A DNA stretch of 64,000 bases from IMGVR_UViG_3300033183_000491:124001-188000, one strand, 5' to 3'; positions 15,850-60,676 are shown, numbered from the stretch's first letter. Made by a program: numbers and translations. The notes: a model not told the origin generated them from the sequence alone.

Positions 15850-18800
15850 TTAAATTACTTCTGACTCTATAATATAAGAAAAACTGTCAAAGAAATCATT
15901 AAAAAGTATGTTTTCTTCATCACCTATTAGTCTAATTATTTCTTCGTTTTCTTGATAATAATTTTTTATAATATTATAAATATCGTTTCTTCCTATTTGA
16001 ACAGAGAAAATGTCATATAATCTATTATCTTCGAATATCTGAGATACGTTACTTATATTTGAATATTTACTTATATTCTTAAAAAATTCTATAAAATGAG
16101 ATTGGCTTTCTATTGTTTTAATTTTTCCATTAAAGTCATTAATTTCTGATATGACTGTTTGTGACTTTTCATAGTTTTCTAAAAATGTCTGTTCAAAATC
16201 CCTTTCAGGCATAGATTCAAACAAACCAATAGATACATCTTCAATTGTATTTGTGCCTTCATTAAAACTTAGAATGTGATTTTCATCTATATTTACTTGC
16301 GTTTTCTTATTAGAATATTTAACAGCATTTGACATTAAAGAATCTGTAACTATTTTTATACTCATATTATTTTTTTCACTAACACCAAAACTCAAGATGT
16401 CTTTTTCTAATCTAAATAATCTTTCATTATTGACTTTTTCTAGTAATCTTTTTTGTATAAATGAATTTACAAAAGAAAAACTTTCTACGTTATATCTTTC
16501 TTTTAGATCTCTTTTAGAAGTATCATAATAAGCTATAAAATCATCTATAAAAATTCCTTCGTTATAATCTCGACTTCCTTCTAAAAGTTTTACGTGAGAA
16601 GGAGTAATTTCTGTTAAAATTGGGGTATAAAATTTATAAATTGAAGGAATATAAATGTTGGGATATTTGTGATTAATTATATTAAATTTTAACTTCAAAA
16701 TTCTCTTGTCAGACAACACTTCAGCTAAGTCATAATCTATTCCTAATCTTATAATATCATATCTCGTATTTAAGTTGTTTAGTAATAAAGATCCTTGATT
16801 TGAAAGTTTACTGATACATTCTTCGTTTTCAATAAATGTACTAAAATATTCTATTGTATTGTCTTTAAGTAATTCATCAAAGTTTTGCTTTAAGTCTTTT
16901 CTTGGGTCTAGATTTATTTTATCTATAAATTTAGAAAATTCTTTTGTTTGATAATAATAATAGTCATTTAATTTTTTAGATACCAGATTAAGCCTAATAT
17001 CGCTTCTGATTATATTTTTTGTATTTGATGAATCTAAAATATTGTCTAAGTTGTTTGTATTTTCAATAATAGACAAAACACTCGATGGATTATTGTTTAA
17101 TTTTTCTAATTCTACTAGATAACTTGAAATTGAATCGAATGACATAATTTCCACGAGATCTGAATTATTTAAAGATTTTTCTATATTAAGGAAATCTGCA
17201 TGAAATTTCGTAAACATAATATCTAAAAATCTCTCATCAGACTCTGAAAATTTCGAGTCCCATTTGTATTTATAATTTCCAGATGATACTAATTTATCAA
17301 TTCCTAATAGATCAAATATATCTTTATTCCACATATCATTTTTAAGAGATATATTATATTGATTTAAATCATAATCATCTAAGAATTTAGGAATACTTTT
17401 AATTATAGACCCTTCAATAACTAAATCAAATATAGAACTATAAATATTACAAGCTATTTTAATAAGATCAAATATTGCTTTACTTTCTTTAGATGAGTCT
17501 TTTACGTAAGAAAATATTTCTTCAATGGAACTAATATTATTAATATCTTCAATAAAATTAGTCTTAGTATATTTAAGAGACTCTATAATAAAATTATTTA
17601 AAAAAGACTTAAAAGGAGATTGATTGTCTAAATTTTTAAGTGAATAATCTTTTATTTTTTCTTTTCGTGAAGTATAATAACCATCTAAATTATCTTGAAG
17701 ATCATCAATACTTTTAGGATTATCTCCACTGAAAGATTTTCGATTTTCTGTTACTAATTGTAATTTTCCATAATAGTTTGTTTCTTGGTCCATATAAAAA
17801 GATCTAAGACTTTCATCACTATTCACGCCTTTTGATGACCTATATATTAAATCAATTATAGCTTCATTATCATTATAATTGAATGAAGTTTTAGTATTTC
17901 CTAATTCACCTGTAACGTCTATACCGTTGTTCAAGTAAACATCATAATTATAAAACTGTGAATAAACAAATTCATAAAGACCTTCTCCAGAATACCCTCC
18001 ATTAAAATATTTAAATCGATTATAATCAACAATTAAATAACCTAGTTTGTTTTCATTAGACGTATCTCTAATTCTGTAAGAAGAACAACCCATATCCGTT
18101 ACATCAATATAAGTGCAGTATTTAGAAGAAATAAAAGGAAAACTTAAAGTATAAGTACTTCCAGGTAACACACCAAAGTCAAAGTCATGATCTAAAATAT
18201 CAAATCGATAACCAGATTCTCCAAAATAAACATTCTCAGGATTATAATACTCGGAATTCTGTGATGGAAAGTTTTGATTTAAAGTAAAATATGTTGTAGG
18301 AAATTCTACAGTTCTCAAAGTATAACTTTTTTGTCTTTGAATGTTTTCAAATGAATAGACACTCTTAATATATTTTTCGTATGAATTATTAGATAACTCG
18401 TTCAATTCATTAAAGTCTTCTTTGTTAACAAATAAATTTTTGTAAGACATTAAAGCTGATGATATCATAACATCGGACATGTCTTTATTTTGATCATGCA
18501 TAATAGCGTCTGATATGAGTTTATCATAACAAAGATTCATTCTATCTTCCGGCGTAAAAGAAGAATCAAAAGAATCTTTAAAAATATTATGAATGTTTTT
18601 TATTAAATGTTGTATTAAGATAGAAGAAGTTTTAAATTCGCTGTCTGTATAATATAAAGAAATAAAATCTTTTAGTTGATCTTTATTAATAGGAAAAACA
18701 ATGTTTTCATTACCGTCGACAAAATAATCAACAGTATTCTTTATATCACCACCTTCAGAAAAATCAAAGTTTTTATAATTTTCCCCACCAGAAGTTTTAA

Positions 18801-21330
18801 TAAATTCACTGTCTTCAAGAGTGCTTATAGATGTTTTAAACAAGTCTGAATATAGGAGACCTAGATATGGTTTACTGTTTTCTACATTATTTACTTTTTT
18901 TGATTTAGATTTAAATTCTTCAAGATAATCTAAAACACTTGATTGATTAGAATTATTTAATTTTATCTTTTTAAGATTAAAAAGACTGTTTCTAATATCG
19001 AAAGCTATTTTTACCCATCCATCTTTTTTAAACCCTACCTTTTTTAAACTTTCAATTGATAATTCTGTGTCATTTTTATCATCTTGATCAAAAGTTGAAG
19101 ATTGTAATATAACTCTATCACTTAAAAATTCGTTTTCTTTTGTTAAAGAATCGTCGTATTTTATAAATTTATCTTTTATTTTTTTAGAATCAAATTCATT
19201 TAAGGTATTTTCAAATAGAACAAATCCTTTAGACGAATATCCTAAACTAATTTCTTTTCGATCTTTTATAAATCTTGAATCGTCGTTGTATAAAGAAGGA
19301 TGAAAGTAATTAATTTTTGATGAATTGTATGCGGGAGTAAAATTATCTTCTTTGACATTAATCTCAAAAAAGGTAGATACCTTTTGATCTTCAAGAAAAT
19401 TTTCTCTATTATCTTCTATATCAAAAGTTCTTATTACAAAATCTTTATTTTTAAATTTTCCTTCTTTTTTATAATAGTCTCTTAAAGATCTTTGAATAAA
19501 GTCAAACTTAATCGGATTAATAAAATGTCTTTCATACTCGTCATTTACGTCAAAATCAGCTTTATCGCCAAGAGAACTCTCTTTATCCTTACGCAAGAAG
19601 TCATTTCCATCTAAGCAAACCTTTAGTATAGGTAAATTACCAACCAAGTCTATAGAAGAAAAATTATTTATAGGTGAATCATAATTTCTATTTAAAAAAT
19701 ATAAGAATTTTGTTGAATTTAAAATATTTTTACTGTTACTAAATCCTATAATTGTTTTATTTTCATTTATACCATGCTCAAAAAAGTCAAAATCTGTTTC
19801 ATATATTGAACTCTCTTTTTCGTCTCCTATGTTTACGATGAAATCACTTATAAGTCTAATCCTAGGGAACAACATCGGATTATAATATCTTGATTTTACA
19901 GTTTGATTAATAAAACCTGACTCATCTACGACGAATTTTTCTTTTAAAAATAAATCAGGTGAAGCAGATCTTGTAGAAGAATGTTTAAACGATAGTGATT
20001 TTTCACTAAGAATATTAGTTAAGTACAGACTATCTTGAAATACTTCATATGATTTTTGATTTAAAGAAGATATTTTTCCATTTCCATCTTTCTTAAATCT
20101 TTCTAAAGAATTAAACCTAGGATATTTGTTCAAGTTAAAAAAATCTTTATTTGAAATACTTAAAGAATAAGCATCATCATTGTTATAGCTATTTAAAACA
20201 TTATTACTATTAGTCTCGATTGAAATAATACTATTTAATTTTATATAAGGGACTTGATTAAATGATAGACTGTCAACGAATCTTAAAAGATCATTTCCTG
20301 ATGTTGATTCCAAACTCTTATCAGACCAAAAATCATATGATAAAGAATCTTTATAAAATCCATTCAAAGATAAGCTTGTATTTAGTAAAATCTGACCAAT
20401 TAATCTATCAGAATTAATAGGTATTTTATTTTCTGAAGAATTTTTTAAATAACTTTCCTTCGAATCATGTAAAGAAACAAGTAAATCAAATATTTCATGC
20501 GACGAGTGTTCTGATCTAAAAGTAAACTCTTCAGTATTATAAAAAAAACTATCTATATTTCTATTAGATTCTTTTATATTTTGATCACCCCTAAATAAAT
20601 CAATGTTACTATTATCAATCAATTCAAAAGCTAATTTTCCTAACGAGGAAGACGAGTTTCCATTTAGGTAGAAATCAGATATCTTATTACCAAAATTGTA
20701 GTTTGTTCTTATTAAGTCAATCTTTTCTAAAGTATTGTCAACACTAGAATAAACTAAATTTAAATTGTTATTAAGGGACGTTAGATTATTTATATGATCT
20801 TCTCTTAAAAATTCACTATTTTCGCTTTTGATGAAATATCTTTCACTATTAGGTTTTTGAATATTATTCAGATAATCTTTTTTAAGATTAAATATTTCAT
20901 CTGAATATATGCTACATTGATTTGTAAGTCTGCCATTTTCATTAATGATAGATTTAGCTTTTACAATTTCATGACTTAAAACATTAGGTAAACTAATATT
21001 GTTAAAAGAATCTTCGTTTGAAGACAATATTTTTGATAAATTATTTAGTATAAAATTGTAACTATCAATGTCGCTATTTTGAAAATAAAAGTCTCTTTGA
21101 GATTGATTTGATACTAGAAAATTAATTGCATTATTAGATGACTCTGTTTGACCGATTAAATGATCTTTTTCTGTAATATCAAGAACGTCTCGAATCGATC
21201 TTTCTTGAGCCTGTCTCGATGTAGATTCTAATTCTCTTGCATTAGGGATCGAACTAGATATAGTCTCTCTTACAAGATTATAACTTTGAGGTCGTGCTTG
21301 ATTATTTACGCCTGATATGTTAATTGACAT
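15850..21330 (-). CDS. Very large hypothetical protein (1826 aa, N/S/D/K/I-rich), probably virion-associated
   Basis: Long ORF with SD AAGG inside the structural block; no recognisable catalytic motif. Confidence 0.7.
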   Translation of the reverse strand: MSINISGVNNQARPQSYNLVRETISSSIPNARELESTSRQAQERSIRDVLDITEKDHLIGQTESSNNAINFLVSNQSQRDFYFQNSDIDSYNFILNNLSKILSSNEDSFNNISLPNVLSHEIVKAKSIINENGRLTNQCSIYSDEIFNLKKDYLNNIQKPNSERYFIKSENSEFLREDHINNLTSLNNNLNLVYSSVDNTLEKIDLIRTNYNFGNKISDFYLNGNSSSSLGKLAFELIDNSNIDLFRGDQNIKESNRNIDSFFYNTEEFTFRSEHSSHEIFDLLVSLHDSKESYLKNSSENKIPINSDRLIGQILLNTSLSLNGFYKDSLSYDFWSDKSLESTSGNDLLRFVDSLSFNQVPYIKLNSIISIETNSNNVLNSYNNDDAYSLSISNKDFFNLNKYPRFNSLERFKKDGNGKISSLNQKSYEVFQDSLYLTNILSEKSLSFKHSSTRSASPDLFLKEKFVVDESGFINQTVKSRYYNPMLFPRIRLISDFIVNIGDEKESSIYETDFDFFEHGINENKTIIGFSNSKNILNSTKFLYFLNRNYDSPINNFSSIDLVGNLPILKVCLDGNDFLRKDKESSLGDKADFDVNDEYERHFINPIKFDFIQRSLRDYYKKEGKFKNKDFVIRTFDIEDNRENFLEDQKVSTFFEINVKEDNFTPAYNSSKINYFHPSLYNDDSRFIKDRKEISLGYSSKGFVLFENTLNEFDSKKIKDKFIKYDDSLTKENEFLSDRVILQSSTFDQDDKNDTELSIESLKKVGFKKDGWVKIAFDIRNSLFNLKKIKLNNSNQSSVLDYLEEFKSKSKKVNNVENSKPYLGLLYSDLFKTSISTLEDSEFIKTSGGENYKNFDFSEGGDIKNTVDYFVDGNENIVFPINKDQLKDFISLYYTDSEFKTSSILIQHLIKNIHNIFKDSFDSSFTPEDRMNLCYDKLISDAIMHDQNKDMSDVMISSALMSYKNLFVNKEDFNELNELSNNSYEKYIKSVYSFENIQRQKSYTLRTVEFPTTYFTLNQNFPSQNSEYYNPENVYFGESGYRFDILDHDFDFGVLPGSTYTLSFPFISSKYCTYIDVTDMGCSSYRIRDTSNENKLGYLIVDYNRFKYFNGGYSGEGLYEFVYSQFYNYDVYLNNGIDVTGELGNTKTSFNYNDNEAIIDLIYRSSKGVNSDESLRSFYMDQETNYYGKLQLVTENRKSFSGDNPKSIDDLQDNLDGYYTSRKEKIKDYSLKNLDNQSPFKSFLNNFIIESLKYTKTNFIEDINNISSIEEIFSYVKDSSKESKAIFDLIKIACNIYSSIFDLVIEGSIIKSIPKFLDDYDLNQYNISLKNDMWNKDIFDLLGIDKLVSSGNYKYKWDSKFSESDERFLDIMFTKFHADFLNIEKSLNNSDLVEIMSFDSISSYLVELEKLNNNPSSVLSIIENTNNLDNILDSSNTKNIIRSDIRLNLVSKKLNDYYYYQTKEFSKFIDKINLDPRKDLKQNFDELLKDNTIEYFSTFIENEECISKLSNQGSLLLNNLNTRYDIIRLGIDYDLAEVLSDKRILKLKFNIINHKYPNIYIPSIYKFYTPILTEITPSHVKLLEGSRDYNEGIFIDDFIAYYDTSKRDLKERYNVESFSFVNSFIQKRLLEKVNNERLFRLEKDILSFGVSEKNNMSIKIVTDSLMSNAVKYSNKKTQVNIDENHILSFNEGTNTIEDVSIGLFESMPERDFEQTFLENYEKSQTVISEINDFNGKIKTIESQSHFIEFFKNISKYSNISNVSQIFEDNRLYDIFSVQIGRNDIYNIIKNYYQENEEIIRLIGDEENILFNDFFDSFSYIIESEVI

Positions 21331-25044: not shown

Positions 25045-28000
25045 TTAAATATCTAAAAATGTTAAGTTGTCTGTACTATAATATGAATTTTTATTTGTAT
25101 TAAAACTTAATAATTCTTCGCCTGATATTATACTAAAGTTTTCATATAATACATTTGGTCCAGATTTTTTCAAGCTTATGTCACAAGATTTAAATTTACC
25201 AGGAACAGTTATATCAAAATTAATTTTATATATTTCTGATGCACTCTCAGAATCATTATAAGAAGATTCAACATTAAAATCAGATATTGAATTTACTGAA
25301 AGAATAATTTGGTCAACGATGTCAAATATTCTTTTTTTAACATCATTGAATTTTGGTGGCAAAGTTGTATCAAAATTTAAATTTTCAAAATCATCAGTTA
25401 TACTTTCAGGAAAATTTAAATAATAGTAATAGTCATCATTCTCATATACTAGACCAGAAGGTAATCCATTTGTATATGCTAATTTGTCATCTGCTATCTG
25501 AAGTATGAACTTTACTTTTTTTGAATCATTGTCAGTAATATCAAATTTTAGCTGATGTATATCTGATGAATAATTTCCACTTATATCTTCCCAAGAAAAA
25601 ACATCTTTTTCTAAGAAAATCTTTTCTAATAAGAAATTCTTTCCAGTAAAACTTTGTATATTAGTAAAATCTAAAGATATACTTCCCGAAACTTTACATG
25701 GATCTTTTTGAAGATAGTATCCCTTCATGAATCTTTTATTAACATTCTTATACTTAGAATCTATGAAGTCATAAATTGTATTATATAACAACTTGTCAGA
25801 TATCATCCCATATTTAGTCTTGTTGAAATAATGTTTAAGAATATAAATAGAATTAAGATTTTCTGCTATTTTATAATAATCGCTTTTAATATCTAACCCA
25901 TTTCTAAAGATTGACTGTAAATTGTAATCTTCATTACTGTAAGATCCATCATTTACATTAGGAAGACTAAATCTATCACCAAGTTTAATTTTATTTTTTG
26001 ATGAATTTATCTTTTTTGTAATAGTAAATCCACTTCTTCCAAAAGAATTCCTGTCATAATAGTTTTGTTCAATTATTGGACTATTACTTCCGAATTTATC
26101 TACAACTTCTAAATTAGAAAATCCTATTCTCTTAGATCTTTTATATTTTTTTATAGATTTATTAGTAATTTTCTTTTTGGAATCATTTTCTAAGTAATGT
26201 CCAATCAAATGAACTTTAAATGGATAATTTTCTGAATTTGATATTTTAACTAAGTCTTCGCCAAATCTTACATTATTTGGTAAATCTTCGTCTTCATGGG
26301 TTTTAAAAGAAGGTGTCAAAGAGACACCAAAAACTAATCTATCTTCAGGAAGAAGAATATAGTTACTTTCTTCATAAGAATTTTCATTAATATTAATTTG
26401 AACACCATTTACATCATTAATTGTCTCTTTTGTTCCAGAATTATCTAAATTTTCTCCTGGTAGAGATCTTTTAGAATCAATATCAATATTAGTACGATTA
26501 CCTTCAGGTTTTTCAGGGTAAATATTAAATTTAGTAAACTTAGATAAATTTTTGTTCTTATAAAAGTGTTTAACAGGAGAAATAACCATTATTTTTTCAT
26601 CTGTATAAATACATTCTGAATTATTGTTTTCGTCTTGAAGAGGTGTCTGAGATTTGTTAATTACTAAATCAACTGTTTCTGTAATTTTGTCTAAATTAAT
26701 AATATGATTATCTGGATTATTCTTCCCAGCAGAATAATTTGCTATTGTAATTGAAGATATTAAGTCTCTTTGTTGAAGACTGTTTGTTTTGTTATCGATT
26801 CCGTCAATCTCGTTTAGATGGATATACTGGCTTTCATGAATACTGTCACCAAGAACTTGTCCATGATAAGACATGTCACTAATTTCAGATTCATTAAAAG
26901 TTCTATTTTCTTCTTTATTGTTTGTAGTAAAAATTGAATCATTACTGTAATCAATTGGACTTATCGTTAATGTATTTTCATCTTGATCATAATACCTTGT
27001 AGTTAAAGAATCCTTTAAAACAGAAGTATTTAGATTACCTTTTTGATTTATTAAAAAGAAATTAACAAAATTTATACTAGGAGTGATATCACTAATACCT
27101 GAAGTTAAAGACCAATTTGACATTGTTAACTCTAAGCATATCTTTTCTATTACAAAAGGTTTTGTAATATATTCTGATGCGTTTATTGTATGTCTATCTT
27201 TAGGACTAAACTTTGATTCATGTGGAAATCCAAAATTATTAATTGGGATAGATCCGTAAGATACTTTTTTAATATTATCTGATTCTTGTGGATTAGAAAC
27301 TATGTCTAAGACAATATTTCTGGGGGTTATCCCGCTAAAACAAATAGGAGATTTTTCTATAAAGGTTCCGATATCTGACTTATAATCTGATGAGATGTTT
27401 CCTAAATAATCATAAGGTCCAAAATTATTCTTTATATACTTTGGGTTGTAAAAATATGCTGTATTACCATTAAAAGAATAATAAGATGTTCCGTCTGGAA
27501 AAGAAATTTGTCTAGTATTTTCATTCTTACTAAAAGACAAATATAAATCAAAATTATTGCTTTTTCTTAAATTGTAATCCAAAGTAATTATATCATTATC
27601 CTCAAGAGAACTAAAGTCCCCTGAAGTAGTAATATTACTTTCATCAATATTTTCAAATCTTCCTTTTAATTGAAGATTTCCAGTTTCTTCATAACAGACA
27701 TAGCTTGAATCTAAATAGTTTTCTTTTAGTAAATGGTTATACACAAAAATTTCAGGACTTTGTGTTGAAATTTCTAAATCTTCGTCGTTAATTGAAATTT
27801 TGTTAGGAGAAGATAAAACTTTGTTTTGTTCTAAAAAATTTATATCATTTAAATATTTTTGTTCAATTCCGAATCTTAGAGATACTTCTTTTTCAATAAA
27901 ATTTATTGTTTTATTATCATCGTAAGGTTTTGAAGAATCATTACTAGTATCACCATGAATTATTTCGTTAGAAAAGAAGTCATGAGACAGATCTTGATTA

Positions 28001-39013: not shown

Positions 39014-39718
39014 TTAAAATATGTCAAACATCTTATCTGGTCCAGCTACTTTTTTATAGTGCTTTCTTATTGAAGATAAAGAAGAACTTAGTTCTGAACT
39101 ATTTAGGCCAGAAATTTCTCTCAAATATACGAAAATAGCTCTTTTATTTAAATAGTCTAAATTATCTACATTAGTAAATATCTGTTGTATAGCTTTAATA
39201 CACCTTATATCTTTTTCATCTTTTAGTTGATCTTCGATATAAAGAAGCATTTCATCTATTACACTCGGTATATTTTCTTTTCTTTCTTTTTCATCGGGCG
39301 ATAATTCTATACTAGTCTCTGAAAGATATTTCTTGTCTGAAAATGATAAGTTTTCTGGAGCATTTAATGATACACTTCTATTCGCGTTTTTTGCTAATCG
39401 TCTAGAATTAATCGTTAACCAGTTTTTTGCGACAACATTAAAATAAGAAAAAGCTTTCGTACCATTTTCAGGATTCCACTTGTTAATTGTTTCAAATAAA
39501 AAGGTAGAACAATCGTTTTTTAAATGGCCAATATCTTCTATAGAAGCTTTAAATTTATAAACAGACACTAAACTGTGAACTAATTCATTAAAAGCTGGCA
39601 TTATATGATGTTCATATATTTTATCTTTTTCTTTTTTAGAATCAGTCTTTTGATAGAGAACTATTTTTTCTTGTGTCTCCATCGTGAAATATTGTTTTCT
39701 TTTTCTTTTTTTGGCCAA
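39014..39718 (-). CDS. gp55: Phage RNA polymerase sigma factor, T4 gp55-like (TTG start)
   Basis: YFT...QEKIV, PAFNELVHSLV..YKF, region-2-like KWNPENGTKAFSYFNVVAKNWL; C-terminal HTH-like segment; SD AAGGA before TTG. Confidence 0.75.
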   Translation of the reverse strand: MAKKRKRKQYFTMETQEKIVLYQKTDSKKEKDKIYEHHIMPAFNELVHSLVSVYKFKASIEDIGHLKNDCSTFLFETINKWNPENGTKAFSYFNVVAKNWLTINSRRLAKNANRSVSLNAPENLSFSDKKYLSETSIELSPDEKERKENIPSVIDEMLLYIEDQLKDEKDIRCIKAIQQIFTNVDNLDYLNKRAIFVYLREISGLNSSELSSSLSSIRKHYKKVAGPDKMFDIF

Positions 39719-39730
39719 TTTACTATTCCT

Positions 39731-40030
39731 TTAAATATTTTCTTCTTCTTTTTCTTCTTCATCAATAAATTTATTATTACTTAAATTAGAAGAAATTTCT
39801 AAGACTATATCTTTTACTTCTTTAATTTCTCCTAGAAGTCTTCTAATTTCTGGACTATCAAAAAATAAAGGAATCTCTAAGATTTCACTTATTCTATTGT
39901 ACTTGTCATCTATTTTATCTAAAGAATCTTCAATTACATCTTGCATCCTGATTATGACTAATGCAAATTTAATACAGAAAAAAGCAAAAAATAAAAGTAA
40001 AAAAGATAGTATTGAAATTATTGTTATCAT
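39731..40030 (-). CDS. Small membrane-anchored coiled-coil protein
   Basis: Hydrophobic N-terminus IIISILSFLLLFFAFFCIKFALVII, then a helical acidic tail; upstream TATAAT. Confidence 0.7.
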   Translation of the reverse strand: MITIISILSFLLLFFAFFCIKFALVIIRMQDVIEDSLDKIDDKYNRISEILEIPLFFDSPEIRRLLGEIKEVKDIVLEISSNLSNNKFIDEEEKEEENI

Positions 40031-40049: not shown

Positions 40050-40055
40050 ATTATA
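40050..40055 (-). promoter_or_regulatory. Sigma70-type -10 hexamer TATAAT for the 99-aa/sigma/125-aa unit
   Basis: Exact TATAAT 19 nt before ATG 40030; no convincing -35. Confidence 0.4.
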
Positions 40056-40064
40056 TATTTCTTA

Positions 40065-40112: not shown

Positions 40113-40946
40113 TTATTTACAATGAATAGTATTTTTAAAATCACAAAACATACAAGAATTTTTATTTTTCAGGAAAAGATTTTTTTCAACAGTTTTAATC
40201 ATACTTCTAACTAGTTTTTGAGATTTTTCTAAGTTTTTTGGCCCGCTAGAAACTTTAATCAATTGACATGATTTTCCAACTGTTTTTACCTTTTTTAATA
40301 AAATAAATCCACATTGAATATCTTTCATTTGAATTTCATTTTTAGTTCCCCAAAAATGCTTATAAAGAATAACTTGTGCTTGCGTGTTAAAGTCTCTTTG
40401 TTTTTCCAAAGACCATCCTCTACCATTTGATGTTTTCCAATCTAATACCCAATATTTATATTTTCCTTTATACGGAACCTTAATGATACAGTCAATATAT
40501 CCTTTAAATTTCGTATCAATAGACTCTATACTTTCATATAACGCCTCTTCGGCAGATTGATATTCCCAATCTGGGAAAGTTTCATCTAAGAAATCAGGAA
40601 CAGATCTTATACTAGTCTCTGCCCATTGTAACCAGTCTTTTAATTTATTATGTTTATATTTCCATCCCTGCAATTCAGCTCTTTGAGTTTGTAATTGAAT
40701 AAAATCTTCTGCGTCAAATCCATGTTCATCCCAAGCTAATTTAATCTTATTTTGAGCTTCTTCGATTTTAAGTTCTTTTGTTTTAAGATAATGTTCGCAT
40801 GCATCATGAATTATTGTTCCATAATGTAAATGTGGGCTTTCTTCAAAAGTTGTTAATTTATCAATATATAATAATTTATGTCTCCAAGAACATTCTTTCC
40901 ATTGTTTAACTTCAGAATAAGATACATGTTCCTTCATTATAGTCAT
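40113..40946 (-). CDS. PD-(D/E)XK exonuclease, Cas4/AddB/RecB-like, with a 1+3 Cys (Fe-S) pattern
   Basis: SYSEVKQWKEC, GTIIH, E...GYID...LDWKT, QVILY, C-terminal CMFCDFKNTIHC; SD GAGAGG. Confidence 0.88.
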   Translation of the reverse strand: MTIMKEHVSYSEVKQWKECSWRHKLLYIDKLTTFEESPHLHYGTIIHDACEHYLKTKELKIEEAQNKIKLAWDEHGFDAEDFIQLQTQRAELQGWKYKHNKLKDWLQWAETSIRSVPDFLDETFPDWEYQSAEEALYESIESIDTKFKGYIDCIIKVPYKGKYKYWVLDWKTSNGRGWSLEKQRDFNTQAQVILYKHFWGTKNEIQMKDIQCGFILLKKVKTVGKSCQLIKVSSGPKNLEKSQKLVRSMIKTVEKNLFLKNKNSCMFCDFKNTIHCK

Positions 40947-40968: not shown

Positions 40969-40974
40969 ATTATA
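40969..40974 (-). promoter_or_regulatory. Sigma70-type -10 hexamer TATAAT for the Cas4-like gene
   Basis: Exact TATAAT 22 nt before ATG 40946; TTTATA lies 18 nt upstream. Confidence 0.4.
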
Positions 40975-41012
40975 TAAAATTTTATTTACATTTATAAATC
41001 ATTTTAAACTGA

Positions 41013-58801: not shown

Positions 58802-60130
58802 TTAAAGTTTTGCTGCAACTATATTTGCAAGATCTGATCTATATCCCTTAGTGAAATTAATATGACCTGTTAAAGATTCTTCTTTTAATTTTTCAACTGT
58901 AAGAGTTAATCCATTCGATAATTTATTAATATAAGGTAAATCAACTTGTTCTATATCACCTAACAAAATTATTTTTGAATTTTTGCCTGTTCTAGTAATT
59001 ACAGTTTTTAATTCATGGACAGTTGCATTTTGAGCTTCGTCAACAATCATTACAGAGTCATTAAAACTTCTTCCTCTGATATGTGATAAAGGTGCTACGT
59101 CAATCTGACCTTTTTCCATCATCATTTCGAAATAAGAAAGATCTCCAAATTGATTTCTAAAGTTATCTACAATTGGTGATAACCAAGGAGACATCTTTTC
59201 ATTTAAGTCTCCGGGCAAGAAGCCAATATCTTTCCCTACTGTCTGAATAGGTCTTGTAAATATGATTCTTTTCTTTGAACCTTTTTCTATAAACTTTAAT
59301 GCAGTCATTAAAGCTAAGTATGTCTTACCACTACCAGGAACGCCTGTTAGAGAAACTAAAGGTATATTTTCATCTAATAAAAGACTTAAAGCAAATATTT
59401 GTTCTTTATTTTTAGGTTCAATACCAGAATTTTTATATAACTCTTTTTTTCCGTCCAAAACAATCAAACGATCATCTTTTCTTATTAGAAGACATGATTG
59501 ATTACTTCCGTTGTTAGATTTAAGAATTAAAAATTCATTTTCAGAAATGTCTATATTATAGTTTTCTTCAACAAGGTCTTCTTTTATCTTCAAATGATTA
59601 CCAGAATAGGCTCTGTTTATAACATCTGGGTCAACTAATAGTTCAACATACCCTTGGAATAAATTGTCTTTCTGCACAAATTCGTAATCTGCATAATAAT
59701 CATCTGCTTCTATTCCTACAGAATCACATTTTACTCTTAGATTAATGTCTTTAGTAATTAAAACAACTTTATTACTTAAATTTTTAAAATAGTTTGCATT
59801 AGAAATTATTTTATTATCATTTTGGTTTTGATCTAATCCTTGTAAACCTGACCAATCACATTCAGCATTTACTGTTATTGATATATCTTTATCTTCAACA
59901 TATATTCCTGAATGTAGGCTTCCTAATTTTCTTAAATCGTCTAGATATCTATTAAAAAATCTAGCATGTTCTCCTAAAATACCCTCTCTTGTTTTAAATT
60001 TATCTAGTTCTTCTAAAACAACTAAAGGTATTACTATATCATTTCCTTTCATATTAAACAAAGAAAATTTGTCATAAAGTAAAACGCTAGTGTCAACAAT
60101 AAAAGTTTTTCTAATATGTTTTTTACTCAT
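58802..60130 (-). CDS. phoH: PIN-PhoH protein (PhoH2/YlaK type)
   Basis: PIN motifs VDTSVLL, LEELD, DNKII, ITKDINLR; PhoH motifs GVPGSGKT, RGRSF, IVDEAQN, LLGDIEQVD. Confidence 0.93.
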   Translation of the reverse strand: MSKKHIRKTFIVDTSVLLYDKFSLFNMKGNDIVIPLVVLEELDKFKTREGILGEHARFFNRYLDDLRKLGSLHSGIYVEDKDISITVNAECDWSGLQGLDQNQNDNKIISNANYFKNLSNKVVLITKDINLRVKCDSVGIEADDYYADYEFVQKDNLFQGYVELLVDPDVINRAYSGNHLKIKEDLVEENYNIDISENEFLILKSNNGSNQSCLLIRKDDRLIVLDGKKELYKNSGIEPKNKEQIFALSLLLDENIPLVSLTGVPGSGKTYLALMTALKFIEKGSKKRIIFTRPIQTVGKDIGFLPGDLNEKMSPWLSPIVDNFRNQFGDLSYFEMMMEKGQIDVAPLSHIRGRSFNDSVMIVDEAQNATVHELKTVITRTGKNSKIILLGDIEQVDLPYINKLSNGLTLTVEKLKEESLTGHINFTKGYRSDLANIVAAKL

Positions 60131-60157
60131 TATCTAGTAAAATCTTTCTTTTAAATC

Positions 60158-60163
60158 TATAAT
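60158..60163 (+). promoter_or_regulatory. Sigma70-type -10 hexamer TATAAT for the stand-alone sigma-4 gene
   Basis: Exact TATAAT 39 nt before ATG 60203, in a divergent intergenic region. Confidence 0.35.
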
Positions 60164-60167
60164 AAAA

Positions 60168-60174
60168 TAAATAT
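60168..60174 (-). promoter_or_regulatory. Candidate late promoter ATATTTA upstream of the PIN-PhoH/lectin/fibre unit
   Basis: 37 nt upstream of ATG 60130. Confidence 0.45.
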
Positions 60175-60202
60175 CAAATTTATTAGAAAGGTTTATTAAA
60201 TA

Positions 60203-60466
60203 ATGAGTAATAATACAGATAGTTTAAATAATGTAACATGCTATAATGCACATAAACTAAAAAACAAAAGCTGTAAAAATAAAAAATGCAGATACTGGCA
60301 TGATCTAAACGATGATGACAATAACTGCATTTTAAACAAGGTAAATTCTGATAAGGATTTTACTTTGCAAGAAATAGGCGATTTATTTGGTATTACTAGA
60401 ATGAGAGTATGTCAAATCGAGAAAGGAATTCTCGATAAAATTAAAAAGAACTTAACTCTTGCCTAG
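60203..60466 (+). CDS. Stand-alone sigma-70 region 4 HTH protein with a Cys/His-rich N-terminus
   Basis: FTLQEIGDLFGITRMRVCQIEK matches sigma70 region 4.2 (TLEEVG..F.VTRERIRQIE); CxxxH..CxxxxCxxWH..C in the N-terminus. Confidence 0.85.
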   Translation: MSNNTDSLNNVTCYNAHKLKNKSCKNKKCRYWHDLNDDDNNCILNKVNSDKDFTLQEIGDLFGITRMRVCQIEKGILDKIKKNLTLA

Positions 60467-60676
60467 AGTAAATTTAACAAAATCTCCAGTGAATCCTTTT
60501 AGGTGTCGGAGGCTTTTTCTAAGTCTAACTCCTGCAGCTTTGTTTCCTTTATTAGCTTTCAAAGAATCTGATTCAATACTTTCTACTAAAAGTTTTAGAT
60601 GATCAAAGTGATCACTAATAGACTCAAGAGTAATTTCTTCTGTTGTAACTTCATTTTCTGTAGTCTCTGTTGACAT
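60452..60676 (-). CDS. Histone H1-like (Hc1 family) small DNA-binding protein
   Basis: KGNKAAGVRLRKSL matches the recalled KGNKAAGTRARK motif of short Hc1-family proteins; SD AAGGAG. Confidence 0.7.
   Translation of the reverse strand: MSTETTENEVTTEEITLESISDHFDHLKLLVESIESDSLKANKGNKAAGVRLRKSLRHLKGFTGDFVKFTLGKS

What the first reader, a model, noticed from the sequence alone, without database searches (positions are those of the whole stretch)
60203..60466. Free-standing sigma-70 region 4 with a Cys/His cluster: a split sigma, gp33 analogue or anti-sigma
Seen: an 87-aa gene with a near-canonical region 4.2 helix-turn-helix and four Cys plus His residues in front. It is one of only four plus-strand genes, has its own TATAAT, and is 20 kb from a gp55-like sigma whose own C-terminal HTH is degenerate. 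Known: region 4 binds the -35 element and the RNAP beta-flap; T4 replaces that function with gp33 and hijacks it with AsiA. Inference: this protein could supply region 4 in trans to the phage sigma, or compete with host sigma70 for the flap to shut off host and early transcription.
Basis: partly seen in the sequence, partly recalled or inferred. Interest (0 to 1): 0.6.

Follow-up and report, generated by a model that had tools for sequence, protein, structure and literature searches.

The report
Free-standing sigma region 4.2 with Cys4
A marine jumbo phage encodes an 87-residue protein that is only the promoter -35-reading helix-turn-helix of a sigma factor behind a four-cysteine metal site, and the same phage's own sigma factor lacks exactly that piece, so sigma may be built from separate parts here, although a second small protein next to the sigma gene competes for the role.

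Summary
The gene is real (window 60203-60466, +, 87 aa). Residues 50-82 match Pfam Sigma70_r4 above threshold, but only region 4.2. Four cysteines (C13, C24, C29, C42) are invariant down to 26% identity; the histidines are not. The family is large, viral and always small.

The window lies in a complete 239,550-bp phage genome with no RNA polymerase. Outside the window this genome encodes a 249-aa RpoD/RpoS-like sigma that stops just after region 4.1. That truncation holds in 75 of 77 related phage loci. The 87-aa protein is the only good region 4.2 in the genome. A complex prediction with the sigma tail gave weak support (0.54; best control 0.02).

Two results weaken this. All 75 truncated sigmas are followed directly by an ~85-aa protein ("A3") with a faint 4.2-like helix-turn-helix. 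The 87-aa gene always lies divergent to PIN-PhoH, as regulators often do.

The phage has about 40 GTGTAA-N17-TATAAT promoters and essentially no TTGACA ones. Which protein reads that box is open. The gp33-analogue, anti-sigma and "234-aa gp55-like sigma" readings are unsupported.

Verdict: new variant of a known kind; interest 0.6.

The parts
60203..60466 (+). Gene for the 87-aa Cys4 + sigma region 4.2 protein ('ZnR4')
   Evidence: ORF. PF04545 scores 38.5 bits against a cut-off of 24.1. 85 homologous clusters. 278 IMG/VR loci.
60239..60328 (+). Cys4 module, C13-x10-C24-x4-C29-x12-C42, with W32 and N41; presumed metal site (Zn or Fe-S not distinguished)
   Evidence: The four Cys are invariant in alignments A1 and A6. 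No structural or family match for residues 1-45. AF2 pLDDT here is 58-71.
60350..60448 (+). Region 4.2 helix-turn-helix (aa 50-82). The recognition helix reads T-R-M-R-V-C-Q-I-E, against T-R-E-R-I-R-Q-I-E in sigma70.
   Evidence: Pfam model positions 18-50. PDB profile hits to SigA/RpoD region 4. Superposition 46-87 on sigma70 564-605 puts M67 at E585 and C70 at R588. The helix is invariant in the close clade.
60135..60163 (+). Promoter-like site TAGTAA-N17-TATAAT for the gene; it overlaps the 5' end of the divergent PhoH gene region
   Evidence: Read from the sequence. Equivalent nTGTA[AC]-N16-18-TAnnnT sites lie upstream of the gene in 21 of 64 distinct related loci, against 2.3 +/- 1.5 in shuffles. 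The generic TTGACA-based scan does not list it.
60185..60191 (+). Ribosome-binding site AGAAAGG, 11 nt before the ATG
   Evidence: Read from the sequence. The same GAAAGG(T/A)TT element precedes both divergent genes in related loci.
58802..60130 (-). Divergent neighbour: PIN + PhoH ATPase fusion, 72-bp shared intergenic region
   Evidence: PF02562 at 1.2e-53 and PF13638 at 1e-27. Same divergent arrangement in 79 of 80 related loci.
60452..60676 (-). Convergent neighbour: Hc1 histone H1-like protein; its 3' end overlaps the ZnR4 gene by 15 nt
   Evidence: PF07432 at 4.2e-11. Present next to the gene in 66 of 80 loci.
39014..39718 (-).
   Evidence: No hit in Pfam, PHROGs, NCBIfam or PDB. hhalign against the phage sigma gives E 0.066 over region 2.1-2.2 only.

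Best explanation
The 87-aa protein is a detachable sigma region-4 module. Its C-terminal 42 residues are a primary-sigma-type -35-reading helix-turn-helix. In front, a four-cysteine metal-binding module replaces the region 4.1 helices.

The phage has no RNA polymerase of its own. It brings an RpoD/RpoS-like sigma that ends after region 4.1.

The most likely mechanism (inferred, not shown) has three steps.
1. The small protein docks on the holoenzyme that carries this 4.2-less sigma. It would contact the region 4.1 stub and tail of the sigma and the beta-flap.
2. It lays its recognition helix on a -35-type element at the canonical 17-bp distance from the -10 element.
3. It thereby sets which phage promoters are used. 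Two base-contact positions are changed (sigma70 E585 to M, R588 to C), so it should not read TTGACA.

Two points are not settled. One is whether it reads the TGTAA box of the roughly 40 GTGTAA-N17-TATAAT promoters. The other is whether it alternates on the same sigma core with the divergent helix-turn-helix protein (A3) encoded right after the sigma gene.
For: Shown:
- Only region 4.2 is present, and it is of the primary-sigma type.
- The genome is complete and lacks an RNAP beta homologue.
- The genome's sigma has regions 1.2, 2 and 3 but only positions 2-18 of the region 4 model.
- On one RpoD model (NF004208, 631 positions) the sigma covers 377-588 and the 87-aa protein covers 584-618, so the two abut.
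- A six-frame scan finds no other good region 4.2 in this genome, nor in five related genomes.
- The truncation is ancient. The 120 closest sigma clusters are 247-254 aa without PF04545. In IMG/VR, 75 of 77 loci stop 11-38 residues after RLRFG.
- Both genes are present in both complete genomes examined (G000, G044) and in G001, G003, G005, G040, G046, G050, G052, G054 and G055.
- Complex prediction of sigma residues 190-249 with the 87-aa protein scored 0.54 in three runs. The best of three controls scored 0.02. The tool's verdict is 'weak support'. That mark was reached by 58 of 80 solved complexes and 2 of 110 mismatched pairs. At 0.60 or under, only 7 of those 80 solved complexes reached it, as did both mismatches. 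Runs agree in at least 83% of contacts and the partner pLDDT is at least 71.
- GTGTA[AT]-N17-TATAAT occurs 34 times against 0.63 expected and is strictly spacing-dependent. TTGACA-N17-TATAAT occurs 0 times.
- The same box is conserved in relatives with different GC content: G001 has 37 against 1 control and G004 has 26 against 0.
- The recognition helix T-R-M-R-V/I-C-Q-I-E-K is invariant in the clade.

Precedents for multi-subunit sigmas are SigO/RsoA, Tn916 Sig7/Sig8, T4 gp55/gp33 and SPO1 gp33/gp34 (bioRxiv 10.64898/2026.10.01.756105). 'Minimal' single-HTH sigmas have been noted in group 2 jumbo phages (PMC7824862).
Against: - The gene lies about 81 kb (circular distance) from the sigma gene. 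A different small protein (A3) follows the truncated sigma directly in 75 of 75 loci, often with overlapping stop and start. The two full-length sigmas in the set have no A3.
- A3 aligns weakly on the 4.2 helix-turn-helix (hhalign probability 23%, E 9e-4). It keeps Arg and Asn at the sigma70 R588 and Q589 positions, which suits the G kept at the third position of the box. The 87-aa protein has Cys at that position (the residue-to-base assignment is from my memory of the sigma70 genetics and the Taq sigma4-DNA structure).
- Co-occurrence may only mean that both are core genes of one clade. Three contigs estimated 71-87% complete carry the sigma without the small gene.
- The complex score is in the range the tool calls more often wrong than right without a strong prior. 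It may also simply reassemble a remembered region 4 fold.
- No fusion of the Cys4 module to a full sigma appears among the best 150 representatives.
- The conserved divergent pairing with PhoH suggests a local regulator.
Confidence: 0.4

Rival explanations
1. Autonomous transcription regulator derived from sigma region 4. The true missing piece of the split sigma is the adjacent A3 protein. The 87-aa protein binds DNA on its own. It would act either at the shared control region with PIN-PhoH (autoregulation or a switch between two overlapping divergent promoters) or on TGTAA boxes, to shut off the early/middle promoter class later in infection.
For: - Divergent PhoH/ZnR4 arrangement in 79 of 80 loci, with the gene always on the opposite strand to its neighbours.
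- The two -10-like elements lie back to back in the 72-bp spacer.
- A3 is linked to the truncated sigma in 75 of 75 loci and is absent from the 2 intact sigmas.
- A3 shows a weak region 4.2-like alignment and an Atlas lead.
- No second promoter class with a distinct -35 was found that the protein could serve.
- Late-region promoters look like TAATATATAATA without a -35 element.
Against: - The strict 17-bp spacing of the TGTAA box argues for a reader fixed on the polymerase. This is the only canonical region 4.2 fold in the genome.
- A3 has no detectable fold match to sigma4.
- No conserved palindromic operator was seen in the intergenic region beyond the two mirrored ribosome-binding regions.
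- The complex prediction with the sigma tail stood well above its controls.
Confidence: 0.3
2. Region 4 mimic used against the host. The protein would compete with host sigma70 region 4 for the beta-flap tip, or for factors that dock on region 4. This would divert host RNAP from host promoters to phage promoters, a one-protein analogue of T4 AsiA/MotA sigma appropriation.
For: - The helix-turn-helix is 33-45% identical to primary sigma region 4.2.
- The phage depends on host RNAP.
- Phage promoters avoid TTGACA altogether.
- Its own promoter has a TTG/TGTAA-type -35 in many clades, which could be used early.
- The sigma-A3 operon itself sits behind a GTGTAA promoter in 20 of 20 AT-rich-clade loci, so something else must read that box first.
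Against: - The region 4.1 helices that form much of the flap-binding surface are missing and replaced.
- There is no similarity to AsiA, MotA or gp33.
- The host is unknown, so no flap model could be tested.
- There is no direct evidence of any kind.
Confidence: 0.15
3. Anti-sigma factor or redox/metal sensor. The Cys4 site would bind Zn or an Fe-S cluster and gate binding to a sigma, as in ZAS anti-sigmas or WhiB-like proteins.
For: - Four invariant cysteines and an invariant tryptophan.
- WhiB-sigma4 complexes appear among the structural neighbours, but only because they contain sigma4.
Against: - No HxxxCxxC motif and no CxxC-x5-C spacing.
- No Pfam hit to anti-sigma or WhiB families, even at E up to 10.
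- The conserved half of the protein is a DNA-reading helix, not an anti-sigma fold.
Confidence: 0.05

Closest known systems
Region 4.2 (domain sigma4) of primary and group 2/3 sigma70-family factors (RpoD, SigA, RpoS, RpoH)
   Same: Same helix-turn-helix, with the T-L-x-E-I-G ... T-R-x-R-x-x-Q-I-E signature. It passes the Pfam threshold and superposes on sigma70 564-605.
   Different: It stands alone at 87 aa and has no regions 1-3. A Cys4 module replaces region 4.1. Base-contact positions E585 and R588 are Met and Cys.
Two-subunit (split) sigma factors: B. subtilis SigO-RsoA, Tn916 Sig7-Sig8
   Same: Promoter recognition is divided between a region 2-bearing protein and a small region 4 protein. 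Here a sigma without 4.2 and a free 4.2 sit in one genome.
   Different: - Known cases split between regions 2 and 4 and are encoded side by side.
- Here the break is inside region 4.
- The sigma keeps regions 1.2, 2, 3 and 4.1.
- The gene is about 81 kb away.
- A third protein (A3) occupies the adjacent position.
- Association with RNAP is untested.
T4 late and middle systems (gp55 + gp33 + gp45; AsiA + MotA)
   Same: A phase-specific phage takeover of host RNAP using small proteins that act at the beta-flap and region 4 position. Late promoters also appear to lack a -35 element here.
   Different: There is no sequence or profile similarity to gp33, gp55, AsiA or MotA. gp33 does not read DNA, whereas this protein keeps a DNA-reading helix.
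'Minimal sigma factor' with a single HTH in group 2 jumbo phages (Iyer et al. 2021, PMC7824862)
   Same: A small phage protein consisting essentially of one sigma-type helix-turn-helix, in RNAP-less jumbo phages that also carry an RpoD-like sigma.
   Different: That paper does not, in the passages read, describe the Cys4 module, the 4.2-less partner sigma, the A3 protein or the promoter class. I did not test whether its 'minimal sigma' is this same family.

Membership tests
Pfam Sigma70_r4 (PF04545) domain | Profile score at or above the gathering threshold | tested here: met
   38.5 bits against 24.1, E 8.2e-10. All 85 relatives carry the precomputed PF04545 label.
Pfam Sigma70_r4 (PF04545) domain | Full domain, including the region 4.1 helices (model positions 1-17) | tested here: not met
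   Only model positions 18-50 align. Structural matches cover residues 46-87 only.
Complete sigma70-family sigma factor | Region 2 (core binding, -10 recognition) | tested here: not met
   The protein has no PF04542 match. The only region 2 in the genome is in the 249-aa protein at 25,962-26,711.
Two-subunit (split) sigma factor | Two proteins whose domains add up to a complete sigma | tested here: met
   The sigma has regions 1.2, 2, 3 and 4.1 and this protein has 4.2. They abut on RpoD model NF004208, at 377-588 and 584-618.
Two-subunit (split) sigma factor | The two genes are adjacent or co-transcribed | tested here: not met
   The genes lie at 26 kb and 184 kb of a 239.5-kb genome. The adjacent gene is A3.
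Two-subunit (split) sigma factor | Physical association of the two subunits | tested here: inconclusive
   Complex prediction scored 0.54 against a best control of 0.02, verdict 'weak support'. The mark was reached by 58 of 80 solved complexes and 2 of 110 mismatched pairs. At 0.60 or under, only 7 of those 80 solved complexes reached it, as did both mismatches. No contacts were reported.
Two-subunit (split) sigma factor | Both subunits bind RNAP and are required for transcription from the cognate promoter | not testable with these tools
   Needs pull-downs and in vitro transcription.
T4 gp33-like late co-activator | Sequence or profile similarity to gp33 | tested here: not met
   No such family in the Pfam, PHROG or NCBIfam scans. 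No gp33 structure appeared among the structural matches listed.
Zinc-binding anti-sigma (ZAS) domain | HxxxCxxC motif in an anti-sigma helical domain | tested here: not met
   The spacing is C-x10-C-x4-C-x12-C and the histidines are not conserved. No anti-sigma Pfam hit at E up to 10.
WhiB-like Fe-S proteins | C-xn-C-x2-C-x5-C cluster motif and a WhiB profile match | tested here: not met
   The Cys spacing differs and there is no WhiB hit. The metal identity itself was not testable.

The most novel reading that the evidence does not exclude
One sigma core (regions 1.2-4.1) uses two exchangeable -35-reading subunits. These are the co-translated A3 protein and the distantly encoded Cys4-region 4.2 protein. 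The phage would then switch promoter classes by swapping a 10-kDa piece of sigma rather than the whole factor, with the Cys4 site making the swap sensitive to metal or redox state. This would be a sigma factor split inside region 4 with modular -35 specificity, conserved across an abundant clade of marine jumbo phages.
Probability: 0.15. Interest if true: 0.85.

Novelty: new variant of a known kind. Interest (0 to 1): 0.6.

Why it matters
Sigma factors are textbook single-chain proteins, and the few split ones divide between regions 2 and 4. Here a widespread, uncultured clade of 200-300-kb marine phages carries four linked features:
- a sigma cut inside region 4;
- a tightly linked small partner of unknown fold (A3);
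- a separate canonical region 4.2 on a Cys4 scaffold;
- a strong promoter class with normal geometry but a non-canonical -35 box.

If the small protein does plug into the holoenzyme, it would show that -35 recognition can be a separable and possibly exchangeable or metal-gated subunit. It would also give a compact, orthogonal promoter/reader pair for engineering. If it does not, it is still a clear case of a sigma domain recruited as an independent regulator.

In both cases the system is directly testable with three small proteins and one promoter.

Tried and rejected
- Phage reference collection: megablast of 4 kb around the gene and tblastn of the protein both found nothing, so no cultured relative could be used.
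hhalign against the phage sigma was insignificant. I dropped it as the partner.
- I considered the 316-aa protein that also hits Sigma70_r4 weakly (genome ~18.6-19.6 kb). It is a NUMOD/HTH homing-endonuclease-like protein.
- A3 as an obvious sigma4: the first hhalign with 4 sequences found nothing. A PDB profile search found nothing. Foldseek and VIA-align found no fold match, best Z 4.9. Only the deeper profile comparison gave a weak alignment.
- Rosetta-stone search for a sigma carrying the Cys4 module: none in the best 150 representatives. The four long hits are sigmas with duplicated canonical region 4.
- Context of distant family members with a canonical T-R-E-R-I-R-Q-I-E helix: the contigs are only 1.3-3.1 kb and uninformative.
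- Search for a second -35 class among non-GTGTA promoters: no positional motif.
- The generic TTGACA/TATAAT and terminator scan around the gene gave counts no better than shuffles and no terminator.
- Atlas search of the Cys module returned only viral 'Sigma-70 region 4' small-protein clusters, with all scores below the level the tool treats as more than a lead.
- Complex prediction returned 'weak support' only. I use it as a hint, not as proof.
- Read-mapping tools were not used. No alternative genetic code was needed.

Full report
**1. What is at the coordinates**

Window 60203-60466 (+) is an 87-codon ORF with an ATG start.
- An AGAAAGG ribosome-binding site lies 11 nt upstream.
- TATAAT lies at 60158-60163.
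- TAGTAA lies at 60135-60140, exactly 17 bp before the TATAAT.

The gene is the only plus-strand gene for about 16 kb. It is divergent to a PIN-PhoH fusion (58802-60130, -). It is convergent with an Hc1 histone-H1-like gene (60452-60676, -), which it overlaps by 15 nt.

**2. The protein**

*The helix-turn-helix.*
- Pfam Sigma70_r4 matches at 38.5 bits (cut-off 24.1). The match covers only residues 50-82 and model positions 18-50, which is region 4.2.
- NCBIfam models place it at the very C-terminus of RpoH, FliA, RpoD and RpoS.
- A family profile finds primary sigma region 4 structures first, E 2e-7.
- An AF2 model (mean pLDDT 71; 80-91 over the helix-turn-helix) has helices at 13-20, 43-48, 55-62 and 66-86.
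- Residues 46-87 of the model superpose on E. coli sigma70 564-605 and Thermus SigA 374-415. The rmsd is 1.6-3.2 A over 37-42 residues at 33-36% identity. Nothing matches residues 1-45.
- That register puts M67 at sigma70 E585 and C70 at R588. R66, R68 and Q71 keep the sigma70 residues.

*The cysteines.*
- In 32 relatives the recognition helix is invariant, and so are C13, C24, C29 and C42.
- In a wider set down to 26% identity the four cysteines and N41 stay invariant and W32 nearly so. H17 is lost.
- Some distant members revert to the canonical T-R-E-R-I-R-Q-I-E helix.
- The Cys spacing fits neither the zinc anti-sigma motif nor the WhiB motif.
- Which metal binds cannot be told from sequence.

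**3. The family**
- There are 85 clusters at 90% identity, all 55-106 aa, from marine metagenomes.
- There are 278 loci in IMG/VR.
- There are 144 clusters at 50% identity with E<=1e-10, essentially all 37-145 aa.
- The four long hits are ordinary sigmas with duplicated canonical region 4. No fusion of the Cys4 module to a sigma was seen.
- The Atlas labels the neighbouring clusters as viral.
- Synteny is rigid. PhoH is divergent in 79 of 80 loci, the 155-aa neighbour is present in 75 and Hc1 in 66.

**4. The genome**

The window is bases 124,001-188,000 of a complete 239,550-bp virus record. It has 29% GC and a 141-bp terminal repeat. The window holds the portal, terminase and other virion genes. 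No RNAP beta homologue is found, so the phage depends on host polymerase.

The gene content recalls the recently described aquatic 'moraphages' (PMC12619734): a sigma, PhoH, an H1-like histone, T4-like structural genes and no RNAP. I did not test membership.

**5. The key lead: a sigma that lacks region 4.2**

A six-frame scan finds one strong Sigma70_r2 in the genome, at 25,962-26,711 (-).
- It is a 249-aa protein with regions 1.2, 2 and 3. Of region 4 it has only model positions 2-18.
- It ends 24 residues after the R-L-R-F-G motif.
- Its best NCBIfam matches are RpoS and RpoD. It covers RpoD model positions 377-588 of 631. The 87-aa protein covers 584-618 of the same model.
- No other good region 4.2 exists in this genome or in five related ones.

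The truncation is not a defect of this genome.
- The 120 closest sigma clusters are 247-254 aa and lack PF04545.
- In 77 IMG/VR loci at 35-84% identity, 75 stop 11-38 residues after R-L-R-F-G.
- Both genes occur together in both complete genomes seen (G000, G044) and in nine larger fragments.
- Fragments lacking one gene are mostly explicable by contig ends. Three contigs rated 71-87% complete have the sigma only.

A complex prediction of sigma residues 190-249 with the 87-aa protein gave 0.53-0.54 in three runs, against 0.00-0.02 for three controls. The tool's verdict is 'weak support'.
- That mark was reached by 58 of 80 solved complexes and 2 of 110 mismatched pairs.
- At 0.60 or under it was reached by only 7 of those 80 solved complexes and by both mismatches.
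- Runs agree in at least 83% of contacts, and the partner pLDDT is at least 71.
- Because regions 4.1 and 4.2 normally form one domain, the score may reflect a remembered fold.

**6. The complication: the A3 protein**

Directly after the truncated sigma lies a conserved 84-97-aa gene, which I call A3. Stop and start often overlap.
- It is present in all 75 truncated loci. It is absent from the two loci whose sigma is full-length.
- The family has 116 clusters and no Pfam label.
- Its AF2 model (pLDDT 78.6) is a beta-hairpin plus four helices with no fold match.
- A deeper profile-profile comparison aligns its helix-loop-helix on the 4.2 helix-turn-helix of the 87-aa family. It needs a 7-residue insertion in the turn, and gives probability 23% and E 9e-4. 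An Atlas lead points the same way.
- In that alignment the invariant R36 and N37 of A3 sit at the sigma70 R588 and Q589 positions.

A3 is therefore at least as good a candidate for the sigma's missing piece.

**7. Promoters**

*Class I (early/middle).* Upstream regions are enriched for GTGTAA and TATAAT.
- GTGTA[AT]-N17-TATAAT occurs 34 times against 0.63 expected. It occurs 6 times at N18 and at most once at any other spacing from 10 to 25.
- TTGACA-N17-TATAAT occurs 0 times.
- With looser -10 and spacing rules there are about 45 sites. They lie at 206-237 kb (+; many small genes) and 5-77 kb (-; includes the sigma-A3 operon). None falls in the virion region that fills the window.
- A conserved A-A-A-C-C-A-T-A-A-G-G follows the -10 element in many of them.
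- The box is conserved in relatives of different GC content: G001 has 37 against 1 control and G004 has 26 against 0.
- It precedes the sigma gene in 20 of 20 AT-rich-clade loci. One clade uses GTGCAA instead.

*The 87-aa gene's own promoter.* Upstream of this gene, 21 of 64 distinct loci have nTGTA[AC]-N16-18-TAnnnT (shuffles give 2.3 +/- 1.5). The first base is usually T rather than G.

*Late genes.* Virion genes are preceded by TAATATATAATA-like sites without a -35 element.

**8. Weighing the explanations**

The strict 17-bp geometry says the TGTAA box is read by something fixed on the holoenzyme at the region 4 position.
- For the 87-aa protein: it is the only canonical 4.2 fold, its invariant helix matches an invariant box, its altered contact residues match a non-TTGACA box, and the sigma-A3 operon lies behind that box.
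- For A3: its physical linkage to the sigma, and its retained Arg at the position that (from my memory of the R588/-33 and R584/-31 genetics) reads the G that the box keeps.
- For an autonomous regulator: the divergent pairing with PhoH.

I put these at 0.40 for a polymerase-docked region 4 module, 0.30 for an autonomous regulator with A3 as the sigma partner, 0.15 for a host-directed region 4 mimic, and 0.05 for an anti-sigma or sensor.

**9. Relation to what is known**

Split sigmas are known: SigO-RsoA, Tn916 Sig7-Sig8, T4 gp55/gp33 and SPO1 gp33/gp34. Iyer et al. noted 'minimal' single-HTH sigmas beside RpoD-like ones in RNAP-less jumbo phages. Four literature searches found no description of a sigma cut between 4.1 and 4.2, of the Cys4 module, of A3 or of the GTGTAA promoter class. 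The library does not cover subscription journals.

I therefore rate this a new variant of a known kind.

Noticed in passing
outside the window: genome G000:C1:25,718-26,711 (-) (locus L005 831-1824): A 249-aa RpoD/RpoS-like sigma lacking region 4.2 is followed by an overlapping 84-aa gene (A3) of unknown fold. The pair is conserved in 75 of 75 truncated-sigma loci and sits next to a GroEL-like gene.
   Followed up: yes
outside the window: G000:C1 about 206-237 kb (+) and 5-77 kb (-): About 45 promoters of the form GTGTA[AT]-N17-TATAAT, often followed by AAACCATAAGG. The conserved stretch after the -10 element is unexplained.
   Followed up: partly
window about 40,050-40,060 and 40,970-40,985 (upstream of the genes at 39731-40030 and 40113-40946), and other virion genes: Late-type promoter-like sites resembling TAATATATAATA lie 20-45 nt before start codons and have no -35 element.
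   Followed up: partly
window 60452-60676 (-): An Hc1 histone H1-like protein gene, convergent with the finding and overlapping it by 15 nt. It is conserved in 66 of 80 related loci, and the same domain is reported in moraphages.
   Followed up: partly
window 60131-60202 and the equivalent spacers in L007-L035: The divergent PhoH and ZnR4 genes have mirrored 5' regions (AAACCTTTC ... GAAAGGTTT, up to 13 bp each in some loci). Their -10-like elements lie back to back. This may be only two similar ribosome-binding regions, or an operator.
   Followed up: partly
window 58802-60130 (-): PhoH is fused to an N-terminal PIN nuclease domain (PF13638 + PF02562).
   Followed up: no
outside the window: G000:C1 about 18,630-19,580 (+) (L002 1300-2250): A 316-aa protein with tandem HTH, NUMOD1 and NUMOD3 motifs, probably a homing endonuclease. 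It is the source of the weak extra Sigma70_r4 hits in the genome scan.
   Followed up: partly
window 39014-39718 (-): A 234-aa ORF starting with TTG. By eye and in a weak hhalign it has a stretch resembling sigma region 2.1-2.2, but there is no significant match anywhere. A divergent late sigma is not excluded.
   Followed up: partly
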